From Octopus sinensis (Eukaryota): 16,412 nt of DNA. Each line of letters starts with the position of its first letter. Position 1 is the first letter of the stretch. Shown piece after piece: positions 86-15,385 of the stretch. Both the position numbers and the translations under genes were made by a program. The notes under the pieces are model-generated. The model worked only from the letters and a program-made list of their open reading frames with translations. It ran no database searches and had not been told where the DNA came from. The stretch lies in NCBI RefSeq assembly GCF_006345805.1, contig NW_021825205.1:1-16412 (forward strand), written 5' to 3'.

Positions 86-206
86 GTTGAGTATAGAAAA
101 TCGGGGTGAGTGACTACTTGATAATTATAAGCACCTGTGTATACCATTTGGTGGTGTAGGTGGTGGAGTAAATTGATCAAAATAAAAACATGATGCGAAG
201 GATTCA

Positions 207-284
207 GCGGCACATATGTTTCGGGCCTTTATTAGACAGATTTATAACAATGCATAATGTATGTCTGTGGCCTTCTTCAGCCGC
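207..284 (-). ncRNA. Mirror copy of the hammerhead motif with a GUG (non-cleavable) triplet
   Basis: Reverse complement of 438-515 except at position 211 (C on +, G on -), giving GAAAC-ATAT-GTG-CCGC. The NUH rule requires H not to be G. Confidence 0.75.
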
Positions 285-437
285 GCACAACAGCTTCCAC
301 AAGGACATGTGTTACATCAAAAATTCTTGGTTGGGGATGCAAATCCTCTCATTCGCGTACGACATAATGCGGCAGCAGCATAGAATTGAAGCGTCCATCT
401 CTTTCTTCAACACATGTCCTTGTGGAAGCTGTTGTGC

Positions 438-3020: not shown

Positions 3021-3055
<35 letters not shown>
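2225..3055. repeat. About 830-bp (CATA)n tetranucleotide array with CATG, TATA and CACA variant units
   Basis: Direct reading. It is the source of all the MYVC and HTYI ORFs in the track. Confidence 0.97.
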
Positions 3056-3260
3056 GCAGTCTCCATGATAGATCATTAGCCACTACAGATATTTTTTCTC
3101 TCCTTGTTTCTCTCCTTGATTTTTCTGTGTCCCTTTCTGTCGAAGAGCGTAGGCTCGAAACGTAAAAGACTTTTTCTATTCCTGAGCGTTATACTAATAT
3201 ATCTGTTTATTTTGTACACCACCTGTCTTCGTCCTTTTTGTCTTTTTCGTAAACTCTCCC
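3056..3260 (+). mobile_element. About 205-bp hammerhead-bearing mini-element (solo pLTR or retrozyme-like monomer) between microsatellites
   Basis: Pyrimidine-rich leader, HHR motif at 3133-3168, TTCCTGAGCGT at 3179-3189 and a T-rich tail. Flanked by (CATA)n and (TA)n. Same layout as 9966-10177. Confidence 0.65.
3133..3168 (+). ncRNA. Minimal type I hammerhead motif with an A6>U core substitution
   Basis: CTTT-CTGTCGA-A-GAGC-gtag-GCTC-GAAAC-GTA-AAAG. Helix I CTTT/AAAG, helix II GAGC/GCTC, helix III reduced to the ACGT palindrome, triplet GUA. Confidence 0.7.
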
Positions 3261-3382
3261 TATATATATATATATATATATAAACATACACACACACATA
3301 AACACACACACATATATGTTTACATACATATATACATAAACACACACACACACACAAAACATATATACGCATACATATATAT
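3261..3382. repeat. Mixed (TA)n/(CA)n microsatellite
   Basis: Direct reading. Confidence 0.9.
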
Positions 3383-3980
3383 TCATGACAGTGTGTCTGG
3401 TGTATTGAATATTAAAAATAAAAATAGAAGTTGTTGAAAGAAGAAACAAATTAGTGGAATTTCATAGGTGTAGATTAAATAAAAATCAATTATATTAAAT
3501 TACTAAAAACGTGTATCAACACTGGTAATACAATGATAAATAAATTCAACGATACTAAAATGATAAATAAAAAAAATTACAAAATAATTACAAATAGATA
3601 CAAAAATTACAAAAAGCTGCAAAACATTACAAAAATACCAAAAAATACATTCATGTATTCAATATCTTTAAAACACATTTTAAGCGGTTGTAGATAAAGT
3701 TTTGATAGCTGTGCATTAAAAATCAACGTTGAGAAGTTTTTATGGGCTAAATTTCAATGTAAAAAACACTTCCATATAATCTTAAAAGATGCATTTAAAA
3801 GTAAATGTTAGAATAAAATAAAAATAAAAAAATAATAAAAACAAAGTAAAGATAAAAGTAGAGATATATAGTTTGTATATAAAGGGGTTTTTTGGGAAGG
3901 CGAAAGTGTAAAATGAAAGTTAATACAAAATGGTGCCGGTTTTGTGTGGAAAAGGTCAAATTCAAATGTGAAAGTCAATG

Positions 3981-6084
3981 TTATCCGTACGGTAGTTTTT
4001 CACTCAACATTTTATACTTCGTGACGTGTTTGCAGGGATTTAAAAGTTCCAATCTTTTGTTCAGAGCGTATTTAGCCTGGAACAGGATGAAAACATTTTT
4101 CAGTCAGGCACAAATCGCACCTCGTTGGGCCTTTATATGCTCCATGTTTGTATGGTGCTACTTTTTCCAAAATTGTCCGGCAGATTTCGAAAGGACGGGT
4201 ATCATTTACTTTCAATTGCCAGACATGTTTAGCTAGACTCGTTGCTGACCTATTCTCAGGGTAAAGAAATGAATTTCGATGGGAATATAATCTAGTGTTG
4301 AAGGAATTTTCTGAGGCTCCTGTACATGTCTTGTATTCTTGAGTCATCTATTTGCACCATAGTTCTGTATGCTATTCGTTTCTCAAAACAATTTCCTCCC
4401 AATGGACAGCAATTTTGTCTTTACAATTACAATTCTTGTTATTATTTCCAGCACTATGGTTACTCCTAACGGTTTTCGCGTTGTGCTGGTTAATTAAAGA
4501 GGCAAAACTCTTGCAGCAAGAGTTCTTGCAACAAAAGTTCTTCAGCCTTCTTCTATTAAAAATTCTTTGGAATGTATGCTTTGCTTGAAAGTGCTTAGAA
4601 ACTAGTTTTAAGAATTCCCTCCCTATATTGGTTTTTACTGCAATACTAAGAGTTGGATTAAACCACAAAACATTCCTAGTTCTACTTTCTACCTGCTCTA
4701 TTATTGTTAGCTGTACTTTGACAATTCTTGATCTTCTCTGAGAATCCATTGTGTCTTAATACATTATTATAATACGGCGCGGAATTTTGAAACGCTGTCT
4801 CGTCTGAAGATATGGAAGATATTCACCTTCCTATATTGCTAACTAGATTCTTAAATAGTATGGGTAGATGATTAGATCCTTTGTTACTATAATATAGCTT
4901 TACATTGAGCTTACGGTAGGATTTTAATTTAATTGCAAAACTAAGTTAATATCTAAAAAACTCTACACTATTTAGTTTCTGTCGTTATTCGTAAGGCCAT
5001 TCTTTGGAAGAAATTTATGAGATTCATCCTAAGTCTATCTAACTCATGACCATTCTTATTACGAGAGACTATTAGACTTTCATCCTTGAATAATCCAGCA
5101 TCTATAAAAGGGAATTCCAGATGCAGATTGTGTAGAATATAAACTCCTGTATACATAATTCAGCACATCGAATAAAAGGCCCTCGCTTTTTTAATCCAGG
5201 TAAAATCGTCGTAAAAGAAGATGGATTTCCTTGCTTGCAGTGTAATATCTATATCCAAATTGTCGACGGAGACATATTGTTGGTGAAGCTTGATGCTTTA
5301 AGGAGTAACGGCCTTGACATTGACGGGTAGAACTCCGTTAATATCGAACTCCGTGAATTTGCAGTTACACTTATGGCCAATTCTCTTGAGTCAATCTATA
5401 ACTGACTTACTATTGTTCCAAATCTGTAAATTTAATTCCATATTTAACTTGTTTAAAATATAATCTAAGATATTTTTGCTATTAATACCTATTTCTGTTT
5501 TAGCTGGGTTGATTAGCCTACATTTAGGATTTCAACTAAAATTAGCTTTGTGGTCCTTAAGAGTGATAAAGGTTGGCGTGGGGGAAGGTATCCTATCCTA
5601 TCACTAATTTTAAGATTGTTAGCGATCCTTCTTACTTCCATAGTCACCTCTATATATAAGTTAGCGTTAGCTTTTTTATAAGTGTCTGTGATATTATTAG
5701 AAAGAAGTCGTTTTTAAAATCTTTTTCAATGCTTAAAGATATTTTTTTACGAAATTTTTATCTGAATTCTTAATGTTTCTAAATTTTTCGTTCATAGTTC
5801 CTAGAGCGAATTGGTTATTTTATGGGATTTTATCCTTCTATTAAGTTCGAAAAGGTCTTTTTTAAAAGCTTCTAATTCTAAAATAGGTGGCGGTTTTTTT
5901 TAGAAGATTTAAGTCCATACTTTTTCATATTAACCTGCAGCTCTTTCATGTCAATGAAATAAGCCCGCCATCTTATTCTTCGGAAAAAATCTTCCGTTTT
6001 TCTAATCAGGTTTTTAATGTATTGCTTCTGCGTCAGGATCGGTATGTTTTTTTTTATAGAAAAATCCAGCAGGTAGATTTCCAT
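3981..6084 (-). pseudogene. Disrupted Penelope-like retroelement ORF: reverse transcriptase plus C-terminal GIY-YIG endonuclease
   Basis: Across several frames: FSIKKNIPI...RRIRWRAYF...YGLKS, NNITDTYKK, FITLKDHK...NPKCRLINPAK, FDI/EFYPS, RKSIFF...WIKK, GLFKDES (decayed YRDD), FLDINL, SNH, SAPYYN, RNVLWFNPT...TNIGREFLKLVSKHF, CNC..CPL..C, Y(I)G.....F.TR...H..SF, LAKHVW, CDLCLTEK, LNKRLELLNPCKH. Stop at 3981-3983. Many stops and frameshifts, and the MGS.DG part of RT motif B is deleted near 5165. The AT-rich 3383-3980 is the probable 3' UTR. Confidence 0.9.
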
Positions 6085-6119
6085 TTTTTCTGCTGTTTCT
6101 TCTTCTTACCTGTGGAGAG

Positions 6120-6266
6120 TCAGCAACTGAGTGTATTGGGCCCTATTCAAATTACCATTAATTTTAACCAATTTTCTTGAACCATCACTTTTTATGTATC
6201 CCCAAAGCATTGGACTCTTACGCCTAAACTTTACTGCTTTCGTCGTGTACCGCAGGTCGTTTCGCT
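6120..6266 (-). mobile_element. Inverted Tc1 transposase fragment (left arm of a foldback)
   Basis: Reads KRNDLRYTTKAVKFRRKSPMLWGYIKSDGSRKLVKINGNLNRAQYTQLL. Homologous to the + strand copy starting at 6280. Confidence 0.8.
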
Positions 6267-6387
6267 TTCTCATAAGCGAAGCGAAACGACCCACGTTACA
6301 CGACAGTGAAGTTTGGGGGTAAGAGTCTGATGCTTTGGGGATTCATAAAACGTGATGGCTCAAGAAAATTGGTTAAAATTGACAATA

Positions 6388-7225
6388 GGCGGAGGAGTGG
6401 CTATGTGGTAAGTAGCTTGCTTACCAACCACATGGTTCCGGATTCAGTCCCACTGCGTGGCACCTTGGGCAAGTGTCTTCTACTATAGCCTCGGGCCGAC
6501 CAATGCCTTGTGAGTGGATTTGGTAGACGGAAACTGAAAGAAGCCAGTCGTATATATGTATATATATGTATGTGTGTATATATGTATGTATATATATATA
6601 TGTAGTGGTGGCGCAATGGCCCAGTGGTTAGGGCAGCGGACTCGCGGTCATAGGATCGCGGTTTCGATTCCCAGACCGGGCGTTGTGAGTGTTTATTGAG
6701 CGAAAACACCTAAAGCTCCACGAGGCTTCGGCAGGGGATGGTAATGATCCCTGCTGTACCCTTTCACCACAACTTTCTCTCACTCTTACTTCCTGTTTCT
6801 GTTGTACCTGTATTTCAAAGGGCCGGCCTTGTCACTATCTGTGTCACGCTGAATATCCCCGAGAACTACGTTAAGGGTACACGTGTCTGTGGAGTGCTCA
6901 GCCACTTACACGTTAATTTCACGAGCAGGCTGTTCCGTTGATTCGTATCAACCGGAACCCTCGTCGTCGTAACCGACGGAGTGCTTCCAATATATATGTA
7001 TGTGTGTATATGTTTGTGTGTGTGTGTTTGTCCCCCTAGAATTACTTGACAACCGATGCTGGTGTGTTTACGTTCCCGTAACTTAGTGGTTCGGCAAAAG
7101 AGACCGATAGAATAAGTACTAGGCTTACAAAGAATAAGTCCTGGGATCGATTTGCTCGACTAAAGGCGGTGCTCCAGCATAGCAGCAGTCACATGACTGA
7201 AACAACTAAAAGAGTAAAAGAGAGT
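6388..7225 (+). mobile_element. tRNA-derived SINE with an internal microsatellite, split by a second SINE, with AATA target duplication
   Basis: Box A-like TGGCTATGTGG and box B-like GGATTCAGTCCC. CORE-like CCTTGGGCAAGTGTCTT. 5' half 6388-6550, 3' half about 7025-7225. AATA at 6384-6387 and 7226-7229, and removing the insert restores the Tc1 frame IDNNLN. A diverged copy lies at about 15110-15385. Confidence 0.85.
6605..6990 (+). mobile_element. Second tRNA-derived SINE (tRNA-Arg-like head, reminiscent of octopus OR-type SINEs) nested in the first SINE's internal (TA/TG)n
   Basis: Box A TGGCCCAGTGGTT and box B GGTTTCGATTCCC in a tRNA-like head, followed by about 300 bp of non-tRNA body. TATATATGTA-type repeats on both sides. 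Confidence 0.8.
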
Positions 7226-7858
7226 AATAACTTGAATAGTGCCAAACACATCCAGTTGCTGAAGGACAATTTGATACCAGACTTGGATGAAGGTGAGATC
7301 TTTCAGCATGACGGATTTCCATGCCACAGATCTCATGCAACACAAGTATCATCGAGCAAATGCGGACAGAAATAAAGGGAAGAATTCATCAGAAGAATCC
7401 ACGCAATCTTGAAGAGTTGTGGGAGCTCAGCCACTGAGAATGGCATCTTATACCTGTCAAGATAGTGAAGGATTTGTGCGCATCAATTCCTAGGCGCATT
7501 GAAGCAGTTATTCAAGCTAAGGTAAGCCACACGAAAGATTAACAATGTACAGTAACTTCTTGAAATGAACTTTATGTAATAAATTTTCATTATAGACATT
7601 TTTTTTTGTTTTAAAATACTGTATCTTAGCCGGTTTTATATGAGGTGGCCGATAACTTTGGCCATTTTTGGTGGTCGTCTCGCAACTTCCCCTCTCATTG
7701 AGAACTCCTACGACAAAATAGAATGATTAGCTTTGGAAATGGCTCCAACAGGGCCAACGTTTCATCTGTAAAAATTGCAATGCGAAACATCCACTTATAA
7801 GTTGGCCATTCGTTGAAATGAACAACAGTTTAAATTAACCGAAGGCTTTTCCACGGTA

Positions 7859-7900
<42 letters not shown>

Positions 7901-8408
7901 TAAGGAAAAGTTTGTGCGCCGTGTTAAAATAATGCTTTTTTGTATATATTTTGTGGTGTGTGTGTTCATTCAGTTCATTATTTTAACATGGCACACGAAC
8001 TTTTTCTTCAGCCTAGTATATATATATGTATATGAATTGTTTTTGAGCATACATTGTCTGGGAGACTCTTCTTATAGTAGAGGAAATAGCTAAATTCTTT
8101 GGCTGCTATTTCTAAAAGTTCGGTATGTGGTAAAGCAAATTTTTTTGCTGAACCCTAATTATATAAAGTAATGTTTAAATTTACCGTAAATGGTCCTTTT
8201 ACATACTGAACACTGCTTGGTAAAATTATTAATTACTAATTAATTCATTAATTTTACCCTTATTATTACTGACTATATGTTATATATATATATATATATG
8301 GAGGCACTAAAATCTTTAAAGTGTTTAGGGACTCTATGTATGGGTCTTAATTCGGTCGTAATAACGGGTTTCTCAAGAAGAACCTACAATTCTCCCTTTT
8401 TTTTTCAG

Positions 8409-8496
8409 CAGAATTCCGAAGACACGAAAGCAGTTTTGTCCTGCCTTGCTAAATTATTTCCTAAATCCTTGATATACAAAATGATGGAATTCTCAG
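8409..8496 (+). CDS. Candidate internal coding exon of an unidentified host gene (QNSEDTKAVLSCLAKLFPKSLIYKMMEFS-G)
   Basis: Strong acceptor (CCCTTTTTTTTTCAG, NAGNAG CAGCAG) and perfect donor CAG|GTGAGT. One open frame (phase 0 to phase 1), with stops in the other two. Product not recognised. Confidence 0.5.
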
Positions 8497-8608
8497 GTGA
8501 GTTCGGCTAAATAACGGAAAACCGGAAGATAAATATCAAACAAGTACTCATTTTTAAGTTGGTCAAAGTCATTATTTTTAAGTTGAGGTTGATGAGGTTA
8601 CTCTAGGT

Positions 8609-9159
8609 CAGGGGTCGGCGAACCGGGGTAAATTACCCGAAGTGGGGTAAAAATGAAATTCTTAGGAGTAATGAGGGCTTATTACACATAAATAAAATTA
8701 TATAAAAATCGTGTTCCTTGTTACAACAGAAAATTTTCTTCTAGCATGAGAAGGCAGTCAAAAAATTGCTACCTTTTGCAACAACCTACTTTTGCTAACA
8801 AGGTTTTTCCATTAATCGATTGAACCCCGAAGAGTCTATCCAAATTGCACTGGCGCCAAAATGCCCCAATTTTGATGTAATTGTAACAAAAATGAAACAA
8901 CATTATTTCTCCAAAACCTGAAGTGAAAAAGTTTCTAGAAAAATCCTAGAAAAATCCTTTTGTTTCATAATGAGGATATTTATTTCATCGCATTTTTTAA
9001 ATGCTTTTTATATTTATATTTGTATTCTCGATATCAATAGATTCAATAAACCTTTTGAATTCAAAGAATCTACGGTTTTTCTTCCTTTCAAATCAAAACG
9101 TTGGCGTAAATAATATATATTTTGGGGTAATTAGTTTTAAAAAATGTTCCCCGACCCTG
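8609..9159 (+). mobile_element. Internally deleted hAT (Charlie-type) element, 551 bp
   Basis: TIRs CAGGGGTCGGCGAAC and GTTCCCCGACCCTG. 8-bp flanks CTCTAGGT and CTATAGCT (6/8 match, NTCTAGAN-like). Internal remnant EKAVKKLLPFATTYFC*QGFS..NRLNPEESIQIAL of the Charlie C-terminal domain. Confidence 0.85.
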
Positions 9160-9316
9160 CTATAGCTCGTGGGATGCTACCTTTTCAGGCGTCAGCGTTC
9201 AGTATGCCACAGTACTGTTGAATTGTATTGATATAGTCTGACAAAACCCCACCCAAAAATAACAAAAATTCAGAGGTAATAAAGGGTCTGCAATACACAC
9301 ATCTCCCCATATATAT

Positions 9317-9695
9317 CGGGTTGTCCGGAAAGTTTGTGCCGATTTATAGTAGCTTACCTTTCGACTTATTTTAGAACATGGTTGAGTCCATAAAATAGGA
9401 TTTTACTACACCTCCATTTAGAGCACAATTTAAGCTATCTTTTTCTGGAAGAAGGTTTATGTTCCTATAACCTGTGTTAATTCTGTAACCCTTTAAAATG
9501 GAAGATAATAAAGTTCATTTTCGCCACTTGATGCTTCAGGAAGCAGACAAAAATTGCTACAGCTCGGCTGTGATGTGTTCCCCCCCCCCTCCATATTCAC
9601 CAGATATTGCTCCTTTGGATTTCTACTTATTCAGGTCTCTGCAGAATAGTCTTAATGGTAAAAATTTCAATTCCTTATACGACATCACACCATAC
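9317..9695 (+). mobile_element. Internally deleted, 3'-truncated mariner remnant
   Basis: TA followed by TIR-like CGGGTTGTCCGGAAAGTTTGTGCCGATTT. Start MEDNKVHFRHLML is fused to QKLLQLGCDV and PPYSPDIAPLDFYLFRSLQNSLNGKNFNSL (YSPDLAP motif). Confidence 0.88.
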
Positions 9696-9699
9696 TAAT

Positions 9700-9937
9700 C
9701 ATATCTGTCAGGCATATGGAAGGGAGTGTAATTCGGCAGGAGGACTTAAACGACATGCAAAGGTACATGAAGCCTAGTTACAACTACAACCGGCTACTGC
9801 CGGTAAAGGTTTTAGCTGCCAATTCTGTACCAGACATTGTAGATCTTTGGCTGGGCTAAAAAGTCACATTAGATCACAGCACCAATAACAGTTAAGCTAC
9901 GTGCAATGGGCATACTCGATAACGAGGGGGGCAACCA
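9700..9937 (+). mobile_element. 3' end of a LINE (RTE-like) with two decayed C2H2 fingers and a short 3' UTR
   Basis: HICQAYGRECNSAGGLKRHAKVHEA*...FSCQFCTRHCRSLAGLKSHIRSQHQ* (stop 9886-9888). This matches the C..C.R.C.S..GL.SH.R pattern of RTE-type ORF ends. About 50-nt UTR, then (TA)n. Confidence 0.55.
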
Positions 9938-9965
9938 TTATATATATATATATATGAATATATAT

Positions 9966-10177
9966 AAATGTGACCGCGTGTGTACCGTTGGCGATTTTTT
10001 CCTACGTCTTCCCTTCTCTGGATCTTTCCTTCTCCTATGTTTCCGACGAAGAGCTCCGCTCGAAACGTTAAACCCCCCTTCTTCCTTTCCTTCCTGAGCG
10101 TCAAATAATACTATATTTGTTCCACGTCCTCACGTTGTTGTGCTTTCTTTTTGTGTTTTCATGTTTGGATTAACTTT
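9966..10177 (+). mobile_element. About 210-bp hammerhead-bearing mini-element between (TA)n runs
   Basis: Pyrimidine-rich leader, HHR motif at 10039-10073, TTCCTGAGCGT at 10091-10101 and a T-rich tail. Same layout as 3056-3260. Confidence 0.65.
10039..10073 (+). ncRNA. Minimal type I hammerhead motif with a U4>C core substitution
   Basis: GTTT-CCGACGA-A-GAGC-tcc-GCTC-GAAAC-GTT-AAAC. Helix I GTTT/AAAC, helix II GAGC/GCTC, ACGT palindrome, triplet GUU. Confidence 0.72.
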
Positions 10178-10229
10178 ATATATATATGTATATCTGTGTA
10201 TGTATGTATGTATGTATGTATGTATATAT

Positions 10230-11174
10230 GATCCGGTTCTTGACTGAAGATTGAAGGCTTCGAATGTCCCGTCCGTGTTTCTTGTATCGTCTTCTAAATG
10301 TTTTACGTTCTTGTCTCAGTTTGTATTTTTCTACATAAAATAATATATATAGCGACGTCCGTACCCTCGTTGGCCTTATGTAAGTACATATTCCTGTAAA
10401 TTTGGTACGACTCTACACACTATCTCTCTCTCCTACATTTCTCTGCCTTTCACACTTTGCACTCTACTTTGATCTGTCCCCTTCTCTCTCTCTCTCTACT
10501 TCTCCTCCTTTTCTCTTTTCTTGCCTCTGATTCTTTGGTCTACTCTTCCCCCCAATCTCTCACAATTCTCTGTCTTTCTCACCTTGCACTCACTAGCCCT
10601 TCTTGGCACGCACTCTTTCTTCTCCCCTCTTTAATTCCTTCTTTCTCTCTCTTCTCCCCCCCCCTTTGTTGCCTTCGTCCCTCTTTCTCTCTCTCTTTGT
10701 TTTTTGCCCCCTTTCTTTTCTCTCTCATCTGTCACGTGACCGCTGGTCAAAATCAGCCTTTTGGCCTCCGACCACTGCCGTGAAAAGATCTGTTGTCTTC
10801 GTCTGCCGATAAAGGCATTTTTTCAAAATACGCCAGCTAAACTTGTTGAACTGTTTATTAGTCGTAAGACACCCGCTGTTTTTTGTCCTGTTTTTACCAT
10901 TATTGTTTTTGTATTTTATATTCGTGTGGCATCGTCCGTTTTTCTGTCCCTGTTTCGTATACATTCGATCCTTCTTCCAAGAAATCTGATGCTCGTAGCT
11001 TAGGTTTTCCTTGGGGCTGGCCGGATCGGAGCGATCTCAAGATTAATCAGCCGAAATTGCGAGGATGATCCGGTTCTTGACTGAAGATTGAAGGCTTCGA
11101 ATGTCCCGTCCGTGTTTTTTGTATCGTCTTCTAAATGTTTTACGTTCTTGTCCCAGTTTGTATTTTTCTACATA
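10230..11174 (+). mobile_element. Non-coding element copy A: 837-bp unit preceded by a 108-bp copy of its own 3' end
   Basis: 10230-10337 and 11067-11174 are direct repeats matching at 106/108 positions. CT-rich body, flanked by (TATG)n and (TA)n. Strand is arbitrary. Confidence 0.8.
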
Positions 11175-11189
11175 TAATGTATATATGTA

Positions 11190-11228
<39 letters not shown>

Positions 11229-11245
11229 ATTATATATATATATAT

Positions 11246-11785
11246 AAGGTATGTAGAAAAATACAACATGGACAAGAACGTATAACTCTTAGAAGACGAT
11301 ACAATAAACACGGACAGGACATTCGAAACCCTCAGTCTTCAGTCAAGAACCGGATCATCGTAGTAATTTCGGCTGATTAATCTTGAGATTACTAGATCAC
11401 GGCCAGCCCTCCAAGAAAAACTAAGCAACGAGCATTAGAAAAACTAAGCTGGGAGCGTAGATTTCCTGGAAGAAGGATCGAATGCATACGGACACCAGGA
11501 CAGCACAAGGGACGAATATAAAAAAAAAAATAAAAAAATAAAATAATGGAATACAGAAACATGAACTACAGAAGCATTAACGGTGAAAACAACAACAAGT
11601 GTCTTACGACTGATAACAAGCAAACAAATTTTTTCTCTGGCGCAAGGAAAGGAGCCTTATCGGCGATGCCTATAGCGGCGGACGAAACACAACGATGTTA
11701 ACACGACGCTGGTCAGAAGCTGAAAGGCAGATTTCGGCCAGCAGTCACGTGACAGAGAAGAGAGAAAAGAAAAGAAAGAGAAGCA

Positions 11786-11824
<39 letters not shown>

Positions 11825-12136
11825 GGACAAACGCGACAAAGAGCGAGAAGAGAGAGAAAGAAGGAATCAGAGAGGAGAAGGGATGGGTGTCGAAGAGCGA
11901 CCTGTGAGTGCAGAGCGAGACAAAGAAATAGGAGGGTAGTGGAAGATTAGACCAAAGAATCAGAGGAAAGAGAAGAGAAAAAGAGGATGAGTAGGAGAGA
12001 AGGGGACAGATCAAGTAAAAGTGAGAGAGAGAGAAGAAAGACAACAAGAGTCGTACCAGTTATTAAGAATATGTGCTCACATTAATGTTAAGAGGGTACG
12101 TGGCGCCTGGAATATATGTTAAGGTATGTAGAAAAA
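11246..12136 (-). mobile_element. Non-coding element copy B (diverged, inverted relative to A): 875-bp unit with a 16-bp terminal direct repeat
   Basis: Collinear reverse-complement similarity to copy A throughout (GATCCGGTTCTTGACTGAAGA, GATTAATCAGCCGAAAT, GTCACGTGAC, CTGATTCTTTGGTCTA, GATCTGTCCCCTTCTCTC, GGTACGACTCT, CGTACCCTC). AAGGTATGTAGAAAAA occurs at 11246-11261 and 12121-12136. Confidence 0.8.
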
Positions 12137-15109: not shown

Positions 15110-15385
15110 TTAGGAGAGCATCTTTTGCCATAGCCCCTGGTCAACCGATGACTTGTGAGTGAATTTTATGCACAGAAACCGTGCGGAAGCCCATCGAATA
15201 CATATGTGTCTACGTGTGCGTGTGAATTGTGTGTGTATGTGTGCATGTTTGAGTCTGTTTGTCCTGCACAGTACTTGACAACCGATATTGGTTTGTTTAC
15301 GTTCTCTCAACTTGGTAGTTCGTCAAAACGGGATCGATGGAATAAGTATCAAACTTTAAAAAAAAGTAAGTGCAAGAGTCGATTT
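15110..15385 (+). mobile_element. Old, 5'-truncated copy of the SINE family at 6388-7225
   Basis: CATAGCCCCTGGTCAACC..TTGTGAGTGAATTT..GAAGCCCATCG, an internal (TG)n, then TACTTGACAACCGAT..TGTTTACGTT..GAATAAGTA, in the same order as the 6388 copy. Confidence 0.75.

What the first reader, a model, noticed from the sequence alone, without database searches (positions are those of the whole stretch)
9966..10177. Second mini-element shows compensatory base changes against the first, supporting a real ribozyme family
Seen: compared with 3133-3168, helix I changes from CTTT/AAAG to GTTT/AAAC (a C-G to G-C swap). Helix II keeps GAGC/GCTC while its loop changes (GTAG to TCC). GAAACGT is invariant and the triplet stays NUH (GUA to GUU). 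Both elements carry TTCCTGAGCGT 15-22 nt downstream, while other flanks have diverged strongly. The two core deviations are at different positions (A6>U and U4>C), so the implied consensus CUGACGA is canonical. Inference: structure was under selection during the family's history, and TTCCTGAGCGT is an unexplained conserved motif (possibly an RT recognition site or a tertiary partner).
Basis: partly seen in the sequence, partly recalled or inferred. Interest (0 to 1): 0.85.

Follow-up and report, generated by a model that had tools for sequence, protein, structure and literature searches.

The report
Decayed Penelope-type minimal hammerhead relics
The two short elements are old, mutated copies of the "minimal hammerhead ribozyme" that Penelope-like retrotransposons are already known to carry, so the motif is real but ordinary and probably inactive at this locus.

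Summary
Window 3133-3168 and 10039-10073 carry the same hammerhead-like motif inside two homologous ~200-nt elements, each bracketed by (TA)n. TTCCTGAGCGT lies 15 and 22 nt 3' of the predicted cut site.

The architecture is that of the "min-HHR" described for Penelope-like elements (PLEs) in 2014:
- no helix III, with a palindromic ACGU in its place;
- a 4-bp helix I;
- an extra A between A9 and G10.1;
- a G10.1-C11.1 pair.

An exact-pattern scan for the shared core found at least 120 matching stretches in metagenome contigs, mostly coral holobiont samples. The same pattern gave one chance hit in 596 Gb of prokaryotic genomes. In 61 distinct sequences helix I shows two-sided covariation. One locus has the motif downstream of an RT plus GIY-YIG ORF, the PLE architecture.

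So the ribozyme family is real and its consensus core is canonical, but it is a known kind. The single C-G to G-C swap between two copies is weak evidence on its own. Each window copy has one core substitution (A6U, U4C), has no tandem partner and cannot form helix III alone, so I expect both to be inactive relics. TTCCTGAGCGT is specific to this lineage and its role is unresolved. Interest is low.

The parts
3056..3260 (+). Copy A of the repeat. It lies between (TACA)n(TA)n ending at 3055 and (TA)n starting at 3261. It is alignable with copy B from about 3091 (ATTTTTTC) to its 3' end.
3133..3168 (+). Copy A min-HHR. Helix I 3133-3136/3165-3168; core CUGUCGA 3137-3143 (A6U at 3140); bulged A 3144; helix II GAGC 3145-3148 / GCUC 3153-3156; loop GUAG; GAAA 3157-3160; palindrome ACGU 3160-3163; H17 = A 3164, with the predicted cut after 3164.
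   Evidence: 41.6 bits with model R1
3179..3189 (+). TTCCTGAGCGT box of copy A, 15 nt 3' of H17.
9967..10176 (+). Copy B of the repeat (the finding). It lies between (TA)n ending at 9966 and (TA)n/(TATG)n starting at 10177. It is alignable with copy A from about 9993.
10039..10073 (+). Copy B min-HHR. Helix I 10039-10042/10070-10073; core CCGACGA 10043-10049 (U4C at 10044); bulged A 10050; helix II GAGC 10051-10054 / GCUC 10058-10061; loop UCC; GAAA 10062-10065; palindrome ACGU 10065-10068; H17 = U 10069.
   Evidence: 44.1 bits with model R1
10091..10101 (+). TTCCTGAGCGT box of copy B, 22 nt 3' of H17.

Best explanation
Copies A and B are two independent, old, solitary insertions of the 3'-terminal (pLTR/3'-UTR) part of a Penelope-like retroelement, or of a short element mobilised by one. 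Each carries the PLE-type minimal hammerhead ribozyme.

How it would work in an active, tandemly transcribed element (inferred from published work on PLEs, not shown here):
- The motif has no helix III of its own.
- Two copies pair through the palindrome A15.1-C15.2-G16.2-U16.1 (ACGU) to form a double hammerhead, which cuts after GUH.
- The PLE RT-EN protein nicks AT-rich or (TA)n DNA.
- It then starts reverse transcription internally, roughly 90-110 nt 3' of the ribozyme. This defines the 3' end of the insertion.

At this locus the copies are relics. Each has one substitution at a conserved core position (A6U in A, U4C in B). They are 6.9 kb apart, not tandem. The flanks have drifted to about 50% identity.

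Shown here: the homology of A and B, the motif architecture, the existence and covariation of the wider family, its link to an RT + GIY-YIG ORF elsewhere, and the (TA)n bracketing.
Inferred: PLE-mediated insertion, dimeric cleavage in the ancestor, and present inactivity.
For: 1. Architecture matches the published min-HHR criteria (PMC4209133): no helix III or loop 3, helix I of 4 bp, one nucleotide between A9 and G10.1, a G10.1-C11.1 pair, and palindromic 15.2-16.2.

Seventy-nine of the 80 fetched loci are AT-rich eukaryote-like contigs. Ga0126343 is a Cyphastrea coral metagenome. The same pattern gave 2 hits in 596 Gb of prokaryotic genomes, one of them a coral-family contaminant, and 0 in IMG/VR.

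3. Among unique sequences the core is CUGANGA in 45 and CCGANGA in 24, and H17 is C, U or A in 69 of 70.

4. Helix I covaries. Pair 2 is C-G 30, G-C 12, U-A 3, A-U 2. Pair 3 is G-C 31, C-G 7, A-U 2, U-A 2. 68% of cells are paired, against 17-39% when the partner is slid. The covariation score is 0.144 against 0.093 +/- 0.011, with 0 of 500 shuffles reaching it.

5. L065 has RVT_1 (E = 5e-8) followed by GIY-YIG (E = 6.6e-4), and the same motif about 670 nt downstream on the same strand.

6. Many related loci show head-to-head inverted pairs, as described for PLEs.

7. Both window copies are bracketed by (TA) runs of at least 4 units; only 1.5% of random ~200-nt intervals are. PLE endonucleases prefer AT-rich or (TA)n targets.

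8. The element ends 96 nt (A) and 107 nt (B) 3' of the predicted cut. In the Anolis PLE PAc, the RT start sites are 85-92 nt 3' of the cut.
Against: - No PLE RT or EN remnant is detectable on the + strand of the window (tblastn with the L065 ORF; Pfam on window ORFs). The link to PLEs for these two copies is therefore by motif and insertion context only.
- Only two copies of this particular subfamily are available. None of the 80 related loci shares its flanks or TTCCTGAGCGT.
- Helix II (4 bp) is shorter than the 6-8 bp reported for Schistosoma and Drosophila PLE min-HHRs.
- Both copies become alignable at the same distance 5' of the ribozyme. This fits a short unit with fixed ends better than random 5' truncation.
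- Minimum-free-energy folding is no better than shuffles (z = -0.4 to +1.7).
- Rfam hammerhead models do not match. They also miss canonical-core min-HHRs, so this negative is uninformative.
- The metagenome search pattern was derived from A and B, so helix II and core conservation in the larger set are fixed by construction.
Confidence: 0.8

Rival explanations
1. A and B are monomers of a short (~165-210 nt) non-autonomous element with fixed 5' and 3' ends. It parasitises PLE machinery in the way a SINE does, or like a solitary non-LTR retrozyme. TTCCTGAGCGT would be its RT/EN recognition or initiation signal.
For: Both copies become alignable at the same point (ATTTTTTC, 42-46 nt 5' of the HHR) and end at homologous 3' termini next to (TA)n. 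TTCCTGAGCGT is significantly better conserved than its surroundings. Recent work argues that animal retrozymes are non-autonomous PLE derivatives (bioRxiv 10.64898/2026.07.22.740005; PMC7229834).
Against: There are only two copies, so two similar truncation points could be coincidence. There is no tandem arrangement, which is the defining feature of non-LTR retrozymes. The motif is a minimal hammerhead, not a canonical type I with loop-loop contacts. The box is absent from all 80 related loci.
Confidence: 0.15
2. The two copies are the decayed flanking pseudo-LTRs of one ancient ~7-kb PLE on the + strand, whose interior (3261-9966) has been overwritten.
For: They have the same orientation and are 6.9 kb apart. 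PLEs carry one min-HHR in each flanking repeat.
Against: Each copy is separately bracketed by its own (TA)n on both sides. The two are only ~50-72% identical, whereas pLTRs start out identical. No + strand RT or EN remnant lies between them. The interior holds an unrelated minus-strand retroelement relic and other repeats.
Confidence: 0.03
3. The resemblance is chance: an unrelated dispersed repeat whose best-conserved hairpin happens to look like a hammerhead.
For: Both cores are non-canonical. MFE folds are not significant. There is no Rfam hit. A one-mismatch descriptor hit is expected in about 5% of shuffled windows.
Against: The same 26-29-nt core with an intact CUGANGA recurs at least 120 times in animal-associated contigs, against about 1 chance hit in 596 Gb of prokaryotic DNA. 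Helix I covaries. The motif sits 3' of an RT-GIY-YIG ORF in L065.
Confidence: 0.02

Closest known systems
Minimal hammerhead ribozymes (min-HHR) of Penelope-like elements (Cervera & de la Pena 2014, Mol Biol Evol; PMC4209133)
   Same: No helix III or loop 3, with palindromic 15.2-16.2 (ACGU). Short helix I (4 bp). An unpaired nucleotide between A9 and G10.1. A G10.1-C11.1 pair. A GUH site. Mostly solitary, dispersed, sequence-heterogeneous copies. AT-rich or (TA)n insertion context.
   Different: Helix II is only 4 bp (5 in some relatives), against 6-8 bp in the Schistosoma and Drosophila examples. Both window copies carry a core substitution. No RT-EN ORF or second flanking repeat is present at this locus. 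The subfamily has a lineage-specific TTCCTGAGCGT box.
Coral-associated min-HHR families found here (L025-L104; for example Cyphastrea metagenome Ga0126343), in line with the more than 4000 minimal HHRs reported in Acropora millepora (PMC7229834)
   Same: Identical core string: C(U/C)GANGA-A-GAGC-loop-GCUC-GAAACGU-H. A subfamily with U4C, as in copy B.
   Different: Helix I is GCU/AGC or GCGU/ACGC, not (C/G)UUU/AAA(G/C). H17 is mostly C. The flanks are unrelated and there is no TTCCTGAGCGT. Copies are often arranged as head-to-head inverted pairs.
Metazoan non-LTR retrozymes (Cervera & de la Pena 2020, NAR; PMC7229834)
   Same: A small (170-400 nt) non-coding unit carrying a type I hammerhead, probably dependent on PLE machinery.
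   Different: Retrozymes are tandem arrays with canonical type I HHRs (helix III plus loop 1-loop 2 contacts) that give circRNAs. Here the copies are solitary and the ribozyme is the minimal form.
Poseidon PLE of Anolis carolinensis (PAc; Frangieh et al. 2024, Mob DNA; PMC11167929)
   Same: The HHR lies near the pLTR-ORF junction. The 3' end of insertions is set by internal RT initiation 85-92 nt 3' of the HHR cut (96 and 107 nt here). AT-rich targets.
   Different: No sequence similarity was tested. PAc has an intact ORF and a protein-assisted active ribozyme. The initiation site there is an AC-rich stem-loop, which I did not identify here.

Membership tests
Hammerhead ribozyme (catalytic motif) | 5' core box C3-U4-G5-A6-N7-G8-A9 | tested here: not met
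   Copy A has CUGUCGA (A6U) and copy B has CCGACGA (U4C). The related loci have CUGANGA in 45 of 70 unique sequences.
Hammerhead ribozyme (catalytic motif) | 3' core G12-A13-A14, A15.1-U16.1, and cleavage triplet NUH | tested here: met
   GAAA, then C-G-U, then A (copy A) or U (copy B), in both copies.
Hammerhead ribozyme (catalytic motif) | Three helices around the core, including an intramolecular helix III | tested here: not met
   Helices I and II have 4 bp each. 15.1-15.2 and 16.2-16.1 are contiguous (ACGU), so no hairpin is possible and helix III can form only between two molecules (sequence).
Hammerhead ribozyme (catalytic motif) | Self-cleavage after H17 | not testable with these tools
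   This needs in vitro transcription of monomer and dimer constructs.
Rfam hammerhead families (all hammerhead models in Rfam release 15) | Covariance-model match | tested here: not met
   No hammerhead hit at E <= 10 in 181-nt searches round A and B. Control: canonical-core min-HHRs in L031, L065 and L095 are also missed, so the models do not cover this form.
PLE min-HHR (Cervera & de la Pena 2014) | No helix III or loop 3, with palindromic 15.2-16.2 | tested here: met
   A-C-G-U in both copies and invariant in 61 related sequences.
PLE min-HHR (Cervera & de la Pena 2014) | Unpaired nucleotide between A9 and G10.1, and a G10.1-C11.1 pair | tested here: met
   A at 3144 and 10050; GAGC/GCUC in both copies.
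PLE min-HHR (Cervera & de la Pena 2014) | Short helix I (4-5 bp) and long helix II (6-8 bp) | tested here: inconclusive
   Helix I has 4 bp, which meets the criterion. Helix II has only 4 bp, or 5 in some relatives.
PLE min-HHR (Cervera & de la Pena 2014) | Consensus families with covariation and compensatory changes | tested here: met
   Met for the wider family (two helix I pairs with two-sided changes; 0 of 500 shuffles reach the score). For the window's own subfamily n = 2, with one swapped pair only.
PLE min-HHR (Cervera & de la Pena 2014) | Location in the flanking repeat or 3' region of an RT + GIY-YIG element | tested here: inconclusive
   Not seen in the window. Seen in related locus L065. 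The literature says most genomic copies are solitary.
PLE insertion signature | AT-rich or (TA)n target, and a 3' end about 90-120 nt past the HHR | tested here: met
   Both copies are bracketed by (TA)n, against 1.5% of random intervals. The 3' ends lie 96 and 107 nt after the cut, against 85-92 nt in PAc.
Non-LTR retrozyme | Head-to-tail tandem repeats of 170-400 nt with a canonical type I HHR | tested here: not met
   Only two copies, 6.9 kb apart, with no helix III or loop-loop motifs.

The most novel reading that the evidence does not exclude
The ~165-210-nt unit is not a random PLE truncation. It is a dedicated non-autonomous mini-element with fixed ends. Its lineage-specific TTCCTGAGCGT box, whose GAGCG repeats the 5' strand of helix II, would be the signal by which a PLE RT-EN recognises or primes on the RNA, or a switch that competes with helix II. 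Together with the coral subfamily that amplified while carrying U4C, this would mean the hammerhead fold is kept for protein recognition rather than for cleavage.
Probability: 0.15. Interest if true: 0.45.

Novelty: new member of a known kind. Interest (0 to 1): 0.2.

Why it matters
It matters little beyond annotation. These are two more relic copies of a ribozyme class already known to occur in thousands of copies in invertebrate and lower-vertebrate genomes.

Three practical points follow:
1. Rfam 15 has no model that detects min-HHRs, so such motifs will keep being flagged as new by scans.
2. The core string CUGANGA-A-GAGC-loop-GCUC-GAAACGU is shared between this genome and stony-coral contigs, which gives a handy exact-match probe.
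3. U4C is fixed in an amplified coral subfamily. This agrees with published hints that PLE spread does not need ribozyme cleavage.

Tried and rejected
- **Rfam scans.** The whole window and 181-nt pieces gave only low-complexity miRNA noise and no hammerhead. This was later shown to be uninformative.
- **MFE folding.** A and B fold no better than shuffles.
- **GAAACGT-N12-32-TTCCTGAGCGT in IMG/VR.** 21 hits, all chance, with no hammerhead upstream.
- **CGAAGAGC-N3-6-GCTCGAAACGT in IMG/VR.** 0 hits.
- **The 30-base three-block pattern in metagenomes.** 0 hits, so the TTCCTGAGCGT linkage is not found outside the window.
- **Fishing for more copies through spurious ORFs.** I used concatenated six-frame translations of A and B as a protein query. 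It drew 8000 word candidates and none scored E <= 10.
- **Look-ups of window ORFs to find the source record.** Not on record, so the organism is not established. SSR load and 25-45% GC only suggest an invertebrate, perhaps a crustacean.
- **The minus-strand retroelement relic next to copy A as a PLE partner.** Pfam finds nothing, similarity to the L065 EN is not significant, and there is no hammerhead on its strand. I rejected it as evidence.
- **A possible third copy at 15292-15332 (-).** It scores 8 bits, E = 0.84, and is part of a different repeat shared with 7001-7153. Rejected.
- **Coding explanation for the conserved blocks.** The loop indel shifts the frame between A and B. Rejected.

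Full report
**What is there**

The window is AT-rich and full of microsatellites (TA, TACA/TGTA, ATCT, AAT, CT). It looks like an invertebrate nuclear genome. I could not identify the source.

- Copy A, 3133-3168: cuuu-CUGUCGA-a-GAGC-guag-GCUC-GAAA-cg-UA-aaag.
- Copy B, 10039-10073: guuu-CCGACGA-a-GAGC-ucc-GCUC-GAAA-cg-UU-aaac.

TTCCTGAGCGT follows 15 nt (A) and 22 nt (B) after the residue that would be H17. It occurs nowhere else in the window.

**Is it more than chance?**

The two ~200-nt stretches are real homologues. Their local alignment score is 52, against 21.2 +/- 3.2 (maximum 37) in 1000 dinucleotide shuffles. Each is the other's best match in the window.

Identity is uneven: about 50% upstream, 72% in the hammerhead block and 46% downstream. 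The matches cluster into exact runs of 8 nt (CGAAGAGC), 11 nt (GCTCGAAACGT) and 11 nt (TTCCTGAGCGT). Two 11-nt runs have P = 0.00045 under column shuffling.

I wrote a descriptor for a hammerhead without helix III. It allows one core mismatch, requires helices I and II of at least 4 bp, and permits an optional bulge. It hits only these two sites on either strand, against 0.05 sites per shuffled window. A covariance model run with filters off also finds only A and B; the next hit scores 9 bits.

The 'compensatory' evidence proper is one pair (C-G in A, G-C in B), and its 5' column sits beside a 3-nt indel. With this base composition a random pair of columns is complementary in both sequences about 15% of the time (my estimate). 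The two-copy comparison therefore does not carry the conclusion.

The 8 differences inside the 36-nt motif fall as follows: 3 in loop 2, 1 at H17, 2 in the swapped pair and 2 in the conserved core. That is what one expects from an ancestor under structural selection followed by neutral decay of each copy.

**What it is**

- an unpaired A between A9 and G10.1;
- a G10.1-C11.1 pair;
- a helix I of only 4 bp;
- no helix III at all, with positions 15.1-15.2-16.2-16.1 forming the contiguous palindrome ACGU.

These are the published hallmarks of the 'min-HHR' that Cervera and de la Pena (2014) found in the flanking repeats of Penelope-like elements (PLEs), and in thousands of solitary copies in metazoan genomes. 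The form is thought to act only as a dimer (PMC4209133; PMC6155905).

Rfam has no model for this form. It reports no hammerhead for A or B even in 181-nt searches at E <= 10. It equally misses canonical-core examples in L031, L065 and L095.

**Relatives elsewhere**

A strict three-block pattern that included TTCCTGAGCGT found nothing in metagenome contigs.

Of the 80 loci fetched, 79 are AT-rich eukaryote-like contigs from a few host-associated projects. Ga0126343 is a Cyphastrea stony-coral metagenome. This fits the thousands of minimal HHRs reported in Acropora. One locus (L076) is a GC-rich bacterial chance hit.

As a control, the same pattern was run elsewhere:
- 596 Gb of prokaryotic genomes gave two hits. 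One is a 70%-GC chance hit. The other is a contig carrying the coral family sequence.
- IMG/VR gave none.

Among 70 unique sequences the 5' box is CUGANGA in 45 and CCGANGA in 24. CUGUCGA is seen only in window copy A. H17 is C 58, U 9, A 2, G 1.

On an alignment of 61 distinct sequences, helix I next to the core shows two-sided changes:
- Pair 2: C-G 30, G-C 12, U-A 3, A-U 2.
- Pair 3: G-C 31, C-G 7, A-U 2, U-A 2.
- 68% of cells are paired, against 17-39% when the partner is slid.
- The covariation score is 0.144 against 0.093 +/- 0.011, and 0 of 500 shuffles reach it.

Helix II was fixed by the search pattern. Extra copies found with the model differ mainly by A-U to G.U (GGGC/GCUC).

In L065 the motif lies about 670 nt downstream, on the same strand, of an ORF remnant with RVT_1 (E = 5e-8) followed by GIY-YIG (E = 6.6e-4). 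This order of domains defines canonical PLEs. Many loci carry two copies head to head on opposite strands, as described for PLE insertions.

**Fit of the window copies to the PLE insertion model**

Both copies are bracketed on both sides by (TA)n. Only 1.5% of random ~200-nt intervals in this window are. PLE endonucleases prefer AT-rich or (TA)n DNA.

The elements end 96 nt (A) and 107 nt (B) 3' of the predicted cut, at homologous termini. In the one PLE studied in vitro, reverse transcription starts internally 85-92 nt 3' of the hammerhead cut, and this sets the 3' end of genomic copies.

No RT or EN remnant is detectable on the + strand of the window. These are therefore solitary fragments, like most copies in the literature.

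**State of the copies**

- A monomer cannot form helix III, because the ACGU residues are contiguous.
- The nearest partner is 6.9 kb away.
- Each copy has a change at a conserved core position.
- MFE folds are no better than shuffles.

I therefore expect no self-cleavage at this locus. This is an inference and was not tested.

A6U looks like a private decay mutation, since it is absent from all relatives. U4C is less clear. In the coral loci it is diagnostic of a whole amplified subfamily: 15 of 15 copies in one subfamily carry CCGA and 15 of 15 in its sister carry CUGA. A master copy with C4 evidently kept spreading. This agrees with published observations that catalytic mutants of a PLE ribozyme still insert in vitro, and that PLE clades without hammerheads proliferate.

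**TTCCTGAGCGT**

The box is conserved beyond its surroundings in A and B, but it is absent 3' of all 80 related motifs. It is a lineage-specific feature.

Its GAGCG repeats the 5' strand of helix II; in copy A the hexamer GAGCGU occurs twice. It could therefore compete for GCUC, but predicted folds do not use that pairing.

A role in RT recognition or priming is plausible by position. It is untested, and two sequences cannot settle it.

**Verdict**

The main inference, a genuine hammerhead family with a canonical ancestral core, is right, though for reasons outside the two-copy comparison.

The family is the already described PLE minimal hammerhead, and these two copies are decayed, solitary relics. 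This is a new member of a known kind, of low interest.

The one open point is whether this ~165-210-nt unit with apparently fixed ends and its private box is a dedicated non-autonomous element or simply a truncated PLE tail.

Noticed in passing
window 4072-5650 (-): Degenerate retroelement ORF with stops and frameshifts. It has an RT-like part (..LKDHKANF..CRLINPAK.., ..FLDI..) followed by a CxC...C cluster, a GIY/YIG-like stretch (..YKTCTGASENSFNTRLYSHRNSF..) and a C-terminal CDLCLTEK. Pfam finds nothing. The one homologue is P0001 (53% identity) on ~1.3-kb Logan contigs from SRR11869384/391/394. An RT followed by a GIY-YIG-like domain would make it PLE-like, but similarity to the L065 EN is not significant (E = 2.5), and there is no hammerhead on its strand.
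   Followed up: partly
L025-L104 (for example L051 206-288, L084 6254-6337, L052 2804-2883, L094 9711-9790, L095 597-696): In the coral-type contigs many min-HHRs occur as head-to-head inverted pairs joined within 0-20 nt of the 5' edge of helix I. One partner often has GGGC rather than GAGC in helix II.
   Followed up: partly
L025-L104: U4C (CCGACGA) is fixed in one amplified coral subfamily (15 of 15 copies), while its sister subfamily has CUGACGA (15 of 15). A master copy with a non-canonical core evidently kept proliferating.
   Followed up: partly
window 173-313 / 409-549: Near-perfect (99%) inverted repeat with 141-nt arms and a 95-nt spacer, followed by (TA)n at 551-566. It looks like a foldback or MITE-like element or a long hairpin.
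   Followed up: no
window 10228-12136: Large imperfect palindrome (about 70% over 1.9 kb) centred on (TA)n at about 11196-11246. The left arm is CT-rich and the right arm GA-rich. The inner arms 11014-11158 / 11265-11409 are 86% complementary. 10228-10350 is repeated at 11065-11186 (96%). It starts about 50 nt after copy B but contains no inverted copy of B.
   Followed up: partly
window 6476-6591 + 7001-7153 and 15121-15238 + 15230-15385: Two copies (71-74% identity) of another dispersed repeat (..ACTTATTCTATCGGTCTCTTTTGCCGAACCACTAAGTTACGGGAACGTAAACACACC..). Each adjoins TG/TA microsatellite. A palindromic segment lies at 6160-6380. ARAGORN calls no tRNA in the window. A weak model hit (8 bits) to this repeat is not a hammerhead.
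   Followed up: partly
L146 (CBDDTI010000485.1, labelled 'MAG: bacterium'): A 7.5-kb, 42%-GC contig in a prokaryotic MAG carries the coral-family min-HHR with its typical flank. It is probably host (animal) DNA binned into a bacterial genome.
   Followed up: no
Rfam release 15: No Rfam model detects PLE-type minimal hammerheads, even ones with a canonical core (L031, L065, L095), so genome scans will not annotate this widespread motif.
   Followed up: yes
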